Assembly: GCF_947568905.1 (NCBI RefSeq)
Contig: NC_079172.1
Location: 31,930,001 to 31,994,000 of the forward strand
Length of the DNA: 64,000 bases
Source: Ostrea edulis
Taxonomy: Eukaryota
Direction of reading: 5' to 3'
Each line of letters starts with the position of its first letter. The first letter of the stretch is position 1. Made by a program: the position numbers and the translations under genes. Shown here in pieces: positions 778-5,212 of the stretch. The notes beneath the pieces were generated by a model. That model was given only the letters and a program-made list of their open reading frames with translations, was not told where the DNA came from and made no database searches.

Positions 778-1154
778 AGATCCGCCACAAGGTAAATTAG
801 ATCGGGCTCAAAATTTTGAGAATTGTCACACAATTGCAGATGATCCCAAAGAAAACGATAATCTGAATAAATACAATTAATTTGTGTATTACTAACCAGC
901 TTATATGCATCTAGAGGGTTTGTAAGGTCTTTACGCAAGAAATTATCGATAAAAATGACAAGTCGCCATTTGCTTTGTTTATTCTTAAAGTTACGATCAG
1001 CTTACGTGTACTAGTGTAGCACACGTAGAGTTACGCTTATTTCTGACGTAAATCTACGTCTACGACTGTTCGTGAATACCGTCCCACACGTAAACGTACG
1101 CTACGTCTAGATTTACGCTACGTTTACGTCTACGAACTTTAGTAAATATGGGCC

Positions 1155-1497
1155 CAGTGTACCAAGTTTGGTGTCATTCAAGCAAAGTGTTCTCAAGATA
1201 TTGAGCAAAGAATATCTTACTACGTCCAGTTTTACCCTTGACCTTGTGGCCTGCAAAATAATAGGAGCGCAACCACTGTACCATGCTTGGTTTCAAACAA
1301 ATGATTTGAGCGAACAATATCTTATGTCCAGAGAAGTTTGACCTTGTGACCTTAACATCAATTAGGAGTAATCGTTTAATTCAGAACCAGTGAACTAAGT
1401 TTGATGTTTGTCAAGCAAGGGGTTCTAAAGATATTGTGCAGCAAATGGTTCTTTAAGTATTGAACGGACAAAATCTTGTCTGCAGACCGACAGACTG
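1155..1497 (+). repeat. Pearl/CvA-like (Helentron-associated) dispersed repeat, left part, interrupted by the RTE
   Basis: Motifs GTACCAAGTTTG, GATATTGAGC, TTGACCTTGTGACC and a GACAGAC microsatellite; continues at 5044-5212; related copies at 6281-6716, 24045-24430 and 32310-33140. Family name from recalled oyster repeats. Confidence 0.55.
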
Positions 1498-1649
1498 GTT
1501 CCTAAGGTTGTTATGCCTAGGGGTGATACTGGAGATAAGCACCCAGTTTCAAAATAAGTGCTCCTATGGGCGTGCGAAAAATATAGCCTCTGACAACCAA
1601 AGTCCAACTCCTGACCTTCTCGTGGTGGAACTGTTTCAACGAACAGGAG
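1497..1649 (+). ncRNA. Predicted HDV-like self-cleaving ribozyme at the RTE 5' end
   Basis: P1 GGTTCC 1497-1502 / GGAACT 1627-1632 (G.U first pair); P2 CTCCTG 1608-1613 / CAGGAG 1644-1649; P3 ACC/GGT; L3 TTCTCGT; J4/2 C1640-GAA. Confidence 0.75.
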
Positions 1650-2081
1650 AAGGGGCAAAGGCGAGACCCTGGCGCCTTAAAACCAGTGCTTGGGGTGGAT
1701 GGAGCTCCTCAGCCTTGGAAGGCAATTCATCTAAGAGAAGGTAAACTCTGATTTCAAACCCGGCGTTGAAAGTCGTTAGTTGTTCACAATATTCAAAACA
1801 TGGGTAGACAGGACTCAATAGCCATGGTCGGCAACCAGTCTAGGAGAAAGAGACTCTGATGTAAAAACTACTCTGCAGGTTTCAAAATCCAACCCTATAT
1901 CGAAAGATAAGGAATTTGTGGGGTGACAATCTGTCAAACTAAGGGATATGGTGAAGCTGAAGGGCCAACCCCCCATCAGTGGATAAAATCGGTTACAGAA
2001 ACAACCATAGAAGCAAATCCTCTTACTCGTCAAAGACTAGAGATAGAGGTAAACCAAACCCCCCAAACACGAGTTCAACGA

Positions 2082-5041
2082 ATGACGCGAAAGCCGAGAA
2101 AGTTGTTCTCACCAAAACATCCAACAAGAATTGCGTGCTGGAACATCCGCACGCTATATCAAAGTGGTAAGTGTGTCCAAGTAGCTAAAGAAATGGATAG
2201 ATACAACATTGAAATACTAGGCTTAAGTGAAGTTAGATGGAACACATCTGGTATAACAACAATAAGCACAGGGCACACCATCGTATATTCGGGAAATCCA
2301 AACATAAATGATCCACATGAGAAAGGAGTTGGATTTTACTCAACAGAACATCAAAGAAAGCACTGTTAGAGTGGAATCCTGTTTCACAAAGAATAATTAC
2401 AGCAAGATTCGACACAAAATTCCAGAAAACCACCATCATACAAGTCTATGCTCCAACTAATGAGGCTGAAGAATCTGAAAAGGATGATTTCTACAATGCA
2501 TTGCAATCCACAGTAGATAAAACACCAAAGCGTGACATCCTTATCATCATGGGTGACCTAAATGCAAAGGTAGGATCAGATAGAGTAGGGAGGGAGACAG
2601 AGATTGGAACACATGGAATAGGAAATATGAACGAAAATGGAGAGTTATTTGCAGACTTCTGTGCAGTCAATAAATCAATGATAGGAGGAACATTCTTCCC
2701 ACACAAAATATGCCACAAGATCACATGGGTATCACCAGCAGGAAATGCAGAGAACCAAATAGATCACATTGCTATATCACACAGATGGAGATCATCACTG
2801 CAAGATGTTAGAAACAAAAGAGGTGCCGATGCTGCATCAGACCATCATTTACTAATGGCTACCATCAAACTAAAGCTGCTATCAAAGAAAAAAACAGAAC
2901 CAAAGAGGAAAAAGTTAAATGTTGCAAAACTAAAGGAACCTTCTACAAAACAAAACTACCAAATAACCTTACAAAACAGATTCTCTGTTTTATTGATCGA
3001 AGAGGAAGACCAAGATATTAATACTATATGGGAGAAAACTAAGAAAGCCATTATACAAACATGTGAAGAAACCATAGGTTATGTCCAAAACAAACGTAAA
3101 CATTGGATGTCAGATGACACTTGGGCTAGAGTAGAGGAAAGAAGACAAGCTAAAGAGAAAGTGGTAAGAGCTACAACCAGACATCAAACACGTCAAGCAC
3201 AGGAGAACTACACCCAAAAAGATCAGGAGGTGAAGAAAAATTGTAAAAAAGACAAAAGAAAGTATGCAGAACATCTAGCACAAGAGGCAGAAACAGCATG
3301 TAGTAAAGGAGACATCAAAACTCTCTTTAACATCACCAGACAGCTGAGTGGTAAACCACCGACTACCAATACACCAGTAAAAGATAAAAACGGAAATGTA
3401 ATAACCAAGATTGAAGAACAACTTAAGAGATGGAAAGAACATTTTCAGGAAGTACTAAATAGACCACCACCGACAAATCCACCTGATATAGAAGCGGGGC
3501 AACCACTAGATATAAATATTGAAGAAGTTACAAGAGATGAAATAGATAGAGCAATAAAACATCTTAAAAATGGGAAATCAGGAGGAGTTGATAACATTCC
3601 ACCAGAGGCAATTAAAGCCATGGACTATATGTCAGTCGAGGCCCTTCACCGCCTGATAAACAGAATCTGGAAGGAAGAACAAATTCCAGATGATTGGCGA
3701 AAAGGACTCCTTATTAAACTTCCAAAGAAAGGTGACCTTTCCTCATGTAACAACTGGAGAGGGATCACCCTGTTATCCATTCCAAGCAAAATCCTATGTT
3801 ATGTCATACTCTATCGAATTAAAGCAAAATTAAACAAAATGCTTAGAGATGAACAAGCAGGATTTAGACAAGAGCGTTCCTGTGTAGACCAGATAGCCAC
3901 CTTAATAATCATAGTAGAACAGACAATTGAATGGCAAACATCTCTTTATATGATCTTTGTAGACTTCGAAAAGGCTTTTGACAGTATCGACCACCAGGTA
4001 CTGTGGGATATTCTCAAACACTATGACATACCTCATAAAATCATCTCTATCATTCAACAGTTTAATGATGGATATAACTGCCAAATAGTTCATGATGGAA
4101 ACCTGACCGATCCGTTTGATGTCACTACCGGTGTAAGGCAAGGCTGTCTCCTGTCCCCTCTCCTATTCTTAATGGTTATAGACTGGGTAACTAAAACAGC
4201 ATATAAAAACCCAAAAGGTATACAGTGGACATTACAAAACCGCCTGGAAGATCTTGACTTTGCCGACGATATATGTATGCTATCACATAGATTTCAGGAC
4301 GCAAAAGAACAGACCATCAGTCTTGAATCAACAGCAAGACAAACAGGCCTTCTAATCAATCCAGTAAAGACAAAGATAATGACAATAAACACAGCTCAGA
4401 CAGAGAAACTACAAATAAGACACAAAGAAGTAGAAAATATAGAAGAATTCACATACCTGGGCAGTATCATCAGCACTACAGGTGGAACCGACGAAGACAT
4501 AAAAGCTCGGAAAAGGAAAGCTCAACAAGCCTTTGCTATGCTAAAACCAGTTTGGAGAAACACCACCTTGAGAACTAGTACCAAACTAAGGCTTTTCAAC
4601 TCTAATGTCAAATCTGTCCTTCTCTATGGGTCCGAAACTTGGAGAGAAACATCAGCATCCATCAAGACACTCCAAGTCTTCTTAAACCGCTGCCTAAGAA
4701 TCATCCTTGGTGTGAGATGGCCAGATACGATTAACAACAAAGAACTGTGGAAAAGAACCAAACAAGAACCAATTGAGATAACAATTAGAACAAGAAGATG
4801 GAAGTGGATTGGACACACATTAAGAAAACCTAACACCAGCATAACTAAACAAGCTCTAGAATGGAATCCACAAGGCAAACGTAAGAGGGGCAGACCGAAA
4901 AACACTTGGCGTAGAGGGATCAATGCAGAGTTACAGGCCATCAATAAAACATGGGGAGAAACCAAAAAAATAGCCCAAGACAGAAAAAAGTGGAAAGCTA
5001 CTGTGGTTGCCCTATGTCCCCCATGGGACGAAGTGGATTAA
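2082..5041 (+). CDS. RTE ORF: AP-endonuclease + reverse transcriptase, one frameshift at ~2334-2337
   Basis: EN motifs WNIRTL, LGLSEVRW, QVYAPT, MGDLNAKVG, IDHIAI, SDHH; RT motifs WRGITLL, QAGFR, FVDFEKAFDS, GVRQGCLLSP, LDFADD. One T is missing in GGATTTT, splitting ORFs 1923-2369 and 2501-5041. Confidence 0.92.
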
Positions 5042-5043
5042 AA

Positions 5044-5212
5044 AGACCGACAGACTGACCCTTAACCTTGTGATCTGAAAACCAATAGGGGTCATCTATA
5101 CTCTCTTGGGGCAACCACCGTACCAAGTTTAGTAACGGTCAAAGAAAGCATTCATTAGATATTGAGCGGACAAGACTTGATCTACAGACCAACCGACAGG
5201 TGCAAAACAATA
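5044..5212 (+). repeat. Pearl/CvA-like repeat, right part
   Basis: Continues the repeat cut at 1497; ends GACCAACCGACAGGTGCAAAACAATATGC like the copy at 6650-6700. Confidence 0.55.

What the first reader, a model, noticed from the sequence alone, without database searches (positions are those of the whole stretch)
1497..1649. HDV-like ribozyme whose cleavage site coincides with the RTE 5' junction
Seen: every element of the nested double pseudoknot is present: P1 GGTTCC/GGAACT with a G1497.T wobble, P2 CTCCTG/CAGGAG, P3 ACC/GGT, L3 TTCTCGT, single-pair P1.1 (C1619-G1633, as in CPEB3), near-absent P4, catalytic-position C1640 followed by GAA, and a ~105-nt J1/2. The predicted scissile bond lies immediately 5' of G1497, the last base of the left TSD. 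Established: HDV-like ribozymes process the 5' ends of RTE/R2-type LINEs. Inference: self-cleavage defined this insertion's 5' end. The 6-bp P1 and minimal P4 make it an unusual variant.
Basis: partly seen in the sequence, partly recalled or inferred. Interest (0 to 1): 0.75.

Follow-up and report, generated by a model that had tools for sequence, protein, structure and literature searches.

The report
HDV-like ribozyme heading an oyster RTE
The first ~155-165 bases of a young but broken RTE jumping gene in this oyster genome fold as a hepatitis-delta-type self-cutting RNA whose predicted cut site is the element's first base. This device is already known for RTE elements, so it is a well-supported new example, not a new kind of thing.

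Summary

The motif alone is only moderately unlikely: 0.115 chance hits per 64 kb with a loose descriptor, and 0 in 200 with an HDV-type L3 required. The family evidence is strong:
- At least 64 copies in the genome fall into RTE families only 47-55% identical in protein but 73-83% identical in this head.
- P2, P3, P1.1 and three J1/2 helices show compensatory changes.
- P1 is invariant in the genome but compensated in a metagenomic homologue.
- TSD-flanked copies of four families begin exactly at GGTTCC (G1497).
- The region is not coding.

Rfam does not detect it (best hit drz-agam-1, 16.7 bits against a cut-off of 37).

HDV-like ribozymes at RTE 5' ends, P4-less forms, 6-bp P1 and structured J1/2 are all published, so this is a new member of a known kind. 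Cleavage itself is inferred, not shown. This copy's ORF is frameshifted. The scan had already reported the same kind of head on two other pieces of this genome.

The parts
1484..1496 (+). Left target-site duplication AGACCGACAGACT
   Evidence: Identical 13-mer at 5044-5056
1497..1502 (+). P1 5' strand GGTTCC. G1497 is the first base of the element; the predicted scissile bond is 5' of it
   Evidence: Homology among copies starts here. TSD-flanked copies start here. It pairs with 1627-1632, with a G.T wobble at the base.
1503..1505 (+). 3-nt linker (TAA) from P1 into the J1/2 domain
1506..1513 (+). P1.2 5' strand GGTTGTTA, the helix that closes the J1/2 domain
   Evidence: Pairs with 1591-1598. 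Shows a compensatory T-A to A-T change and T.G to C-G or T-A changes among families.
1515..1571 (+). Inner J1/2 hairpin domain: 1515-1524 with 1560-1571, and 1525-1533 with 1542-1550
   Evidence: Predicted by RNAalifold. Both-side changes at three pairs (alignment columns 23-72, 31-55, 34-52).
1591..1598 (+). P1.2 3' strand TGACAACC
1603..1605 (+). Distal extension of P2 (TCC), pairing with GGG 1652-1654 across an internal loop
   Evidence: T.G changes to C-G in one family
1608..1613 (+). P2 5' strand CTCCTG
   Evidence: Pairs with 1644-1649. G1613-C1644 becomes A-T in families D and E.
1614..1616 (+). P3 5' strand ACC
   Evidence: Pairs with 1624-1626. The A-T pair is seen as G.T and as G-C in other families.
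1617..1623 (+). L3 TTCTCGT; C1619 forms P1.1
   Evidence: T-N-C-N-C-G-T is conserved in all families
1624..1626 (+). P3 3' strand GGT
1627..1632 (+). P1 3' strand GGAACT
   Evidence: Invariant in intact copies. The metagenome homologue has TTGAACC opposite GGTTCAA.
1633..1634 (+). P1.1 3' side: G1633 pairs with C1619; T1634 faces T1618 (mismatch in this family)
   Evidence: The second pair is T-A in family C and G-C in family D
1635..1639 (+). 5-nt linker TTCAA in place of P4
   Evidence: 5-7 unpaired nt in every family; no helix
1640..1643 (+). J4/2 CGAA with the catalytic-position C1640
   Evidence: This C is conserved in all families, 3-4 nt before the P2 3' strand
1644..1649 (+). P2 3' strand CAGGAG
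1650..1760 (+). Rest of the conserved non-coding head; includes GGG 1652-1654 of the P2 extension
   Evidence: Similarity between families runs to about 1760
2082..5041 (+). RTE ORF (APE endonuclease + RT + DUF6451). In this copy the frame shifts near 2333.
   Evidence: The intact 986-aa ORF is present in copies L033 and L036.
5042..5043 (+). AA tail remnant. Other copies carry (GTAA)n tails here.
5044..5056 (+). Right target-site duplication AGACCGACAGACT

Best explanation
Window 1497 to about 1654 is a P4-less HDV-like self-cleaving ribozyme forming the 5' head of an RTE-type LINE (1497-5041).

Inferred mechanism. A source element is transcribed, probably as part of a longer read-through or upstream-initiated RNA. 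The head folds into the nested double pseudoknot: P1/P1.1 stacked, and P2/P3 stacked. A structured J1/2 domain closed by an 8-bp P1.2 helix, together with an extended P2, holds P1 and P2 side by side. C1640 in J4/2 catalyses scission of the bond 5' of G1497. This removes upstream host RNA and leaves an element RNA that starts at G1.

Target-primed reverse transcription of that RNA makes copies that begin exactly at GGTTCC. The copy in the window is such a product. It is young (0.8% from an intact copy). Its ribozyme helices are intact but its ORF is frameshifted.

Shown here: the fold, its conservation and covariation, and the precise 5' ends. Inferred: catalysis and its role.
For: (1) All elements are at the stated coordinates.

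(2) There are at least 64 CM hits in the genome. They belong to families whose ORFs are 47-55% identical in protein but whose heads are 73-83% identical in DNA.

(3) Pair counts on 20 copies: 95.5% of cells are paired, against 41-53% when the partner is slid by 1-3 columns. Both-side changes occur in P2, P3, P1.1 and three J1/2 pairs. RNAalifold independently predicts P2, P3 and the J1/2 hairpins. P1.2 covaries.

(4) The P1 strands are invariant in the genome. Homologous heads on metagenome contigs read GGTTCAA/TTGAACC, a compensatory C-G to A-T change at P1 pair 6.

(5) C1640 and the L3 core are conserved in all families.

(6) TSD-flanked copies of four families start exactly at GGTTCC. 31 of 50 hits start with GGTTCC. 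Upstream 20-nt identity is 0.28, against 0.75 downstream.

(7) The region is not coding: the frame open in family A is closed in families C and D.

(8) There is a weak partial match to Rfam drz-agam-1 over P2/P3/L3.

(9) Literature. RTE ribozymes cleave at the 5' junction, and P4-less forms are known (PMC3774820). A structured J1/2 with an extended P2 activates the RTE ribozyme Agam-2 (PMC4908430).
Against: - No cleavage assay was possible.
- P1 shows no covariation inside this genome. The cross-species support rests on three decayed copies from one metagenome sample.
- P1.1 in this family is a single C-G pair next to a U.U mismatch.
- No Rfam family reaches its threshold.
- The single-sequence MFE is not better than shuffles (z = -0.54), although that method cannot model pseudoknots.
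- Precise 5' ends could also come from an internal promoter.
Confidence: 0.85

Rival explanations
1. The head is a conserved structured 5' UTR with another job, such as an internal promoter, a translation start or recognition by the element's protein. The 5' end is then set by transcription initiation at G1497, and the HDV-like arrangement is not catalytic.
For: The precise 5' ends would also fit a fixed start site. The whole 264-nt head, not only the ribozyme core, is conserved. L1Tc combines a promoter and a ribozyme in the same bases (PMC3383444), so the two roles can coexist.
Against: The conserved and covarying features are exactly those of the HDV fold. P1.1 covaries across a pseudoknot. 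The catalytic-position C, the L3 core T-N-C-N-C-G-T and the G.U at the predicted cleavage site are all kept among families with about 50% protein identity.
Confidence: 0.1
2. The fold is a chance match of short helices in one sequence.
For: A loose descriptor hits 0.115 times per 64 kb by chance. The MFE z-score is not significant.
Against: With the L3 constraint there were 0 hits in 200 simulations. The same helices recur with compensatory changes in many copies and families and on foreign contigs.
Confidence: 0.01
3. The conservation of the head reflects a short 5' ORF: in family A a 102-aa frame is open from element position 2 to 307.
For: The frame is open in four young family-A copies.
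Against: Its ATG is not conserved, and all three frames carry stops in families C and D. The substitutions are pairwise-compensatory rather than codon-periodic.
Confidence: 0.02

Closest known systems
drz-Agam-2 HDV-like ribozymes of Anopheles gambiae RTE elements (Ruminski et al. 2011 as cited in PMC3774820 and PMC5786205; Webb et al. 2016, PMC4908430)
   Same: HDV-like ribozyme at the 5' terminus of an RTE element. Large structured J1/2 (P1.2) domain joined by short linkers. P2 extended beyond the core. Cleavage at the element's first base.
   Different: Agam-2 is not described there as P4-less, whereas here 5 unpaired bases replace P4. No detectable sequence relationship. The inner J1/2 domain here is branched. 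Activity is untested here.
HDV-like ribozyme of the abalone Haliotis discus with 5 nt in place of P4 (Webb and Luptak 2011, as cited in PMC3774820)
   Same: Mollusc host. P4 replaced by 5 nucleotides, as in TTCAA 1635-1639.
   Different: The source paper is not in the held library, so I could not compare sequence or genomic context. Homology is not tested.
R2 ribozymes of Bombyx mori and other silkmoths (PMC3774820)
   Same: Long J1/2 (216-498 nt there, 105 nt here). No P4 stem. Catalytic C kept.
   Different: Those belong to the R2 clade, which is site-specific in 28S rDNA. Their P1 5' strand comes from 28S, and cleavage lies upstream of the junction in many species.
Mammalian CPEB3 ribozyme
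   Same: It shares the double-pseudoknot topology.
   Different: CPEB3 is intronic and not in a retrotransposon. It is a short ribozyme (abstract); that it has a P4 and a short J1/2 is from my memory. The Rfam CPEB3 model does not match here.
Rfam RF01787 drz-agam-1
   Same: Partial match over P2, P3 and L3 (GACCUUCUCGUGGUG against the consensus).
   Different: 16.7 bits against a gathering score of 37, E = 1.3. Its P1 and P4 are not matched. This is not membership.

Membership tests
HDV-like self-cleaving ribozymes | Nested double-pseudoknot order: P1-5', J1/2, P2-5', P3-5', L3, P3-3', P1-3', P1.1, (P4), J4/2, P2-3' | tested here: met
   The coordinates follow this order. 95.5% of cells are paired across 20 copies, against 41-53% when slid.
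HDV-like self-cleaving ribozymes | Core helices P2, P3 and P1.1 supported by compensatory change | tested here: met
   P2: G-C/A-T. P3: A-T/G.T/G-C. P1.1 second pair: T.T/T-A/G-C.
HDV-like self-cleaving ribozymes | P1 helix of 6-7 bp whose first base is the cleavage site, supported by compensatory change | tested here: inconclusive
   The 6-bp P1 is present and both strands are invariant in the genome, so there is no covariation there. Three metagenome homologues show GGTTCAA/TTGAACC, a compensated pair 6, but these are few and decayed copies.
HDV-like self-cleaving ribozymes | G.U wobble at the base of P1 | tested here: met
   G1497.T1632; G.U in 17 of 18 scorable copies. The metagenome homologues have G-C instead.
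HDV-like self-cleaving ribozymes | Catalytic cytosine in J4/2 just 5' of the P2 3' strand | tested here: met
   C1640 followed by GAA then CAGGAG. This C is kept in all families.
HDV-like self-cleaving ribozymes | About 7-nt L3 with the conserved C (P1.1) and C-G core | tested here: met
   TTCTCGT here; T-N-C-N-C-G-T in all families. The consensus used for comparison is from my own knowledge of HDV.
HDV-like self-cleaving ribozymes | P4 helix | tested here: not met
   Only 5 unpaired nt (1635-1639). P4 is dispensable, and P4-less natural members are published (PMC3774820), so this does not exclude membership.
HDV-like self-cleaving ribozymes | Divalent-metal-dependent self-scission giving a 5'-OH product | not testable with these tools
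   Only indirect evidence: TSD-flanked copies begin at the predicted product's first base.
Rfam HDV-type families (HDV, CPEB3, drz-agam-1 and the library's other HDV-like models) | Score at or above the family's gathering threshold | tested here: not met
   No hit at gathering thresholds. Best hit is drz-agam-1 at 16.7 bits against 37. No HDV-type match at E up to 5 on four sister-family copies and two of the metagenome contigs.
RTE clade of non-LTR retrotransposons | Single ORF with an N-terminal APE-type endonuclease and an RT; element of about 3.3-3.5 kb | tested here: met
   The intact 986-aa ORF has Exo_endo_phos 33-255, RVT_1 548-796 and DUF6451 817-849. The element is 3545 bp. Clade traits are from my own knowledge (Malik and Eickbush 1998).
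RTE clade of non-LTR retrotransposons | Very short 3' UTR ending in short tandem repeats instead of poly(A); TSDs | tested here: met
   The TAA stop is the last 3 nt of the element. Other copies have (GTAA)n tails. TSDs are 11-14 bp.
RTE clade of non-LTR retrotransposons | RT sequence groups with the RTE clade in a phylogeny | not tested
   No reference LINE set was on hand, and the large protein search was left unused.

The most novel reading that the evidence does not exclude
Two readings go beyond the ordinary one.

(a) The sister RTE families D, E and F in this genome carry a covarying 6-7-bp hairpin inserted between the 7-nt L3 core and the P3 3' strand of the same ribozyme, yet still make TSD-flanked copies that begin at G1. 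If those heads cleave, this would be a structural variant of the HDV fold (a peripheral helix growing out of the active-site loop). I found no description of it in the held literature.

(b) The head may also be a module kept or exchanged among RTE lineages as far apart as 25% protein identity.
Probability: 0.35. Interest if true: 0.55.

Novelty: new member of a known kind. Interest (0 to 1): 0.35.

Why it matters
It adds a well-supported bivalve example to the HDV-like ribozymes that process RTE retrotransposon RNAs. Rfam models miss it, so current annotation pipelines would leave it unmarked.

The data set is a ready-made natural mutagenesis series for a P4-less HDV fold with a structured J1/2 domain. 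It comprises several RTE families about 50% identical in protein that share one head, with intact young copies.

The head is the most conserved part of these elements, which underlines how important 5' processing, or a linked function such as translation start, is to RTE propagation.

It does not change the current understanding of these ribozymes.

Tried and rejected
- Rfam at gathering thresholds over the whole window found nothing. At E up to 10 on 1300-1900 the only relevant hit was a sub-threshold drz-agam-1 match. At E up to 5 on sister-family and metagenome loci there was no HDV-type hit.
- The single-sequence MFE fold was not informative (z = -0.54) and cannot model the pseudoknots.
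- An alternative P1 5' strand at 1545-1550 (AGTTTC), found by my descriptor, was rejected because it is not complementary in other families.
- The coding explanation for the conservation was rejected.
- RNAalifold's distal helix 1589-1592/1659-1662 (GCCT/AGGC) never varies and crosses P1.2, so it is left open.
- The metagenome pattern scan gave 94 hits, about what chance predicts for 17 fixed bases. Only 3 of the 80 contigs returned were real by the covariance model.
- TRF found no tandem array in the flanks.
- The papers of Webb and Luptak 2011 and Ruminski et al. 2011 are not held, so they are cited only through PMC3774820 and PMC5786205.
- I did not run the large protein searches, structure prediction or an RT phylogeny.

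Full report
**What is in the sequence.**
- P1: GGTTCC 1497-1502 pairs with GGAACT 1627-1632, with G1497.T1632 at its base.
- P2: CTCCTG 1608-1613 pairs with CAGGAG 1644-1649.
- P3: ACC 1614-1616 pairs with GGT 1624-1626.
- L3: TTCTCGT, 1617-1623.
- P1.1: C1619 can pair with G1633.
- P4: absent; only TTCAA (1635-1639) stands in its place.
- J4/2: C1640-GAA precedes the P2 3' strand.
- J1/2: 105 nt (1503-1607).

The order of the strands is that of the HDV nested double pseudoknot.

**Is it more than chance?** A descriptor holding only these helices and spacings hits 0.115 times per 64 kb (both strands) in 200 simulated sequences of the same dinucleotide make-up. So the single-sequence observation is suggestive but not decisive. 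Requiring an HDV-type L3 (T-N-C-N-C-G-N) gave 0 hits in 200. In the real window only this site matches. Rfam finds nothing at its thresholds. The best sub-threshold match is drz-agam-1, an HDV-like ribozyme, at 16.7 bits against 37, over P2/P3/L3. The MFE of 1497-1662 is no better than shuffles (z = -0.54), but that method cannot model pseudoknots.

**The element.**
- 1497-5041 is a 3545-bp LINE flanked by a 13-bp TSD, AGACCGACAGACT (1484-1496 and 5044-5056).
- Intact sister copies (L033, L036) carry one 986-aa ORF with an APE-type endonuclease, RVT_1 and DUF6451.
- The TAA stop is the last three bases of the element.
- Other copies end in (GTAA)n tails.
- These are RTE-clade traits by my own knowledge. 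I did not build an RT phylogeny.
- The window copy is 0.8% diverged from L036. It has a one-base deletion near 2333 that shifts the frame, an extra A near 1551 in a J1/2 loop, and A1607 in an internal loop. None of these touches a ribozyme helix.

**Family evidence.**
- The genome (895 Mb; earlier notes of this scan call it an oyster) holds at least 64 covariance-model hits to the head.
- They belong to families whose ORFs are only 47-55% identical in protein to the window's family. Their first ~264 nt are 73-83% identical in DNA, while the coding DNA aligns at 62-68%. The head is therefore the most conserved part of these elements.
- It is not coding. The 102-aa frame open over it in family A has no conserved ATG and is closed in all three frames in families C and D.

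**Covariation.**
- On 20 copies from four families, 95.5% of cells form standard pairs, against 41-53% when the 3' partners are slid by 1-3 columns.
- Both-side changes occur in the core:
  - the P2 closing pair: G-C in families A-C, A-T in D and E;
  - the first P3 pair: A-T, G.T and G-C;
  - the second P1.1 pair: T.T in the window's family, T-A in C, G-C in D.
- They also occur in three pairs of the J1/2 hairpins.
- RNAalifold, blind to the hypothesis, predicts P2, its distal extension, P3 and the J1/2 hairpins.
- I also found an 8-bp helix closing J1/2: GGTTGTTA 1506-1513 with TGACAACC 1591-1598. Among families it shows a compensatory T-A to A-T change and T.G to C-G or T-A changes.
- The architecture is therefore: P1, a 3-nt linker, a closed P1.2 domain, a 4-nt linker, then an extended P2. 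This is the arrangement shown to activate the RTE ribozyme Agam-2 by pinching P1 and P2 together (PMC4908430).
- The caveat is that the families are few, so each compensatory change is one or two events.

**P1.**
- Both P1 strands are invariant in intact genomic copies. That shows constraint but not pairing.
- A scan of metagenome contigs for the invariant J1/2 stretch returned mostly chance hits. Three contigs of one sample (ERZ1740055) carry a real homologue at 89-95 bits.
- On the longest of these (L180), the downstream RTE-like ORF is only about 25% identical in protein.
- Their P1 reads GGTTCAA/TTGAACC. Pair 6 is changed from C-G to A-T, a seventh A-T pair is added, and the base pair is G-C instead of G.U.
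- Two of the three copies also show CpG-to-CpA decay in L3 and at the P1.1 G.
- This is compensatory support for P1, from few and decayed copies.

**5' ends.**
- Homology among copies starts at GGTTCC. 31 of 50 hits begin with exactly those six bases, and most others differ by a point change or lack 1-2 bases.
- Pairwise identity is 0.28 in the 20 nt upstream and 0.75 in the 20 nt downstream.
- Copies with unambiguous TSDs place the element's first base at the first G: L032, L033, L034 and L039 (family A); L042 (B); L043 (C); L047 and L049 (D).
The family shows it is the element's first base.

**Mechanism and rivals.** The best reading is ribozyme processing. The source element's transcript folds, C1640 cuts 5' of G1, and reverse transcription of the product gives copies starting at G1. 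The cut that defined this insertion's end took place in the parental RNA, not at this locus. The main rival is a structured head with another function, with the 5' end set by a fixed transcription start. It cannot be excluded without an assay, and the two can coexist, as in L1Tc (PMC3383444). However, what is conserved and covaries is specifically the HDV active-site architecture. Chance and coding explanations are rejected.

**Comparison with what is known.**
- HDV-like ribozymes at the 5' ends of RTE elements, cleaving at the junction, are established (Ruminski et al. 2011, cited in PMC3774820 and PMC5786205).
- P1 of 6-7 bp is typical (PMC3774820, PMC4908430).
- P4 is dispensable. A natural ribozyme with 5 nt in its place is reported from an abalone, and silkmoth R2 ribozymes combine long J1/2 with no P4 (PMC3774820).
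- The scan has already reported the same kind of head on two other pieces of this genome (s1-301830, s1-281890). My tests agree with both.

**Beyond the finding.** Families D, E and F carry an 18-21-nt insertion between the L3 core and the P3 3' strand. It forms a hairpin whose stem covaries: GGTTTG/CAAGCC, GGCTTAG/CTAAGCC, GGTTTAG/CTAAACC. TSD-flanked family-D copies still begin at G1. I found no description of such an L3-side helix in the held literature. Whether these heads cleave is open.

Noticed in passing
L063:1501-1692 (-), L066:1501-1692 (+), L082, L085, L091, L092 (sister RTE families in the same genome): The same ribozyme carries an 18-21-nt hairpin inserted between the 7-nt L3 core and the P3 3' strand. 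The stem covaries among families (GGTTTG/CAAGCC, GGCTTAG/CTAAGCC, GGTTTAG/CTAAACC). This may be an undescribed peripheral helix of the HDV fold.
   Followed up: partly
L113:1334-1515 (-), L156:1090-1265 (-), L180:2548-2732 (-) (metagenome sample ERZ1740055): Homologous heads (89-95 bits). On L180 the downstream RTE-like ORF is only about 25% identical in protein. P1 reads GGTTCAA/TTGAACC. L113 and L156 show CpG-to-CpA decay in L3 and at the P1.1 G.
   Followed up: partly
L180:2859-2903 (-): A type I hammerhead ribozyme (Rfam RF00163, 40 bits, above the gathering score of 34) lies about 130 nt upstream of the HDV-like head on the same metagenome contig.
   Followed up: no
5' junctions of copies L051-L100: The base just before GGTTCC is T in 19 of 31 copies (T is 31% of the window). 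Where TSDs are clear, this T belongs to the target, so it may reflect a preference in second-strand cleavage or joining.
   Followed up: no
L032:81-697, L049:89-702, L046 (about 1.09 kb): Short internally deleted derivatives keep the ribozyme head and the 3' end of the element, with TSDs (for example 550 nt of head plus 72 nt of tail). They are bipartite non-autonomous RTEs of the kind discussed in PMC5786205.
   Followed up: partly
window 1100-1496 and 5057-5210: The RTE is inserted in a dispersed, partly tandem repeat with more than 2000 candidate copies in the genome (units of about 110-280 nt). TRF does not call it.
   Followed up: partly
window 1650-1760: The head stays conserved between families for about 100 nt beyond the ribozyme core (for example CTGGCGCCTTAAAACCAG). 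Its function is unknown; it may be part of the extended P2, a translation signal or a protein-binding element.
   Followed up: no
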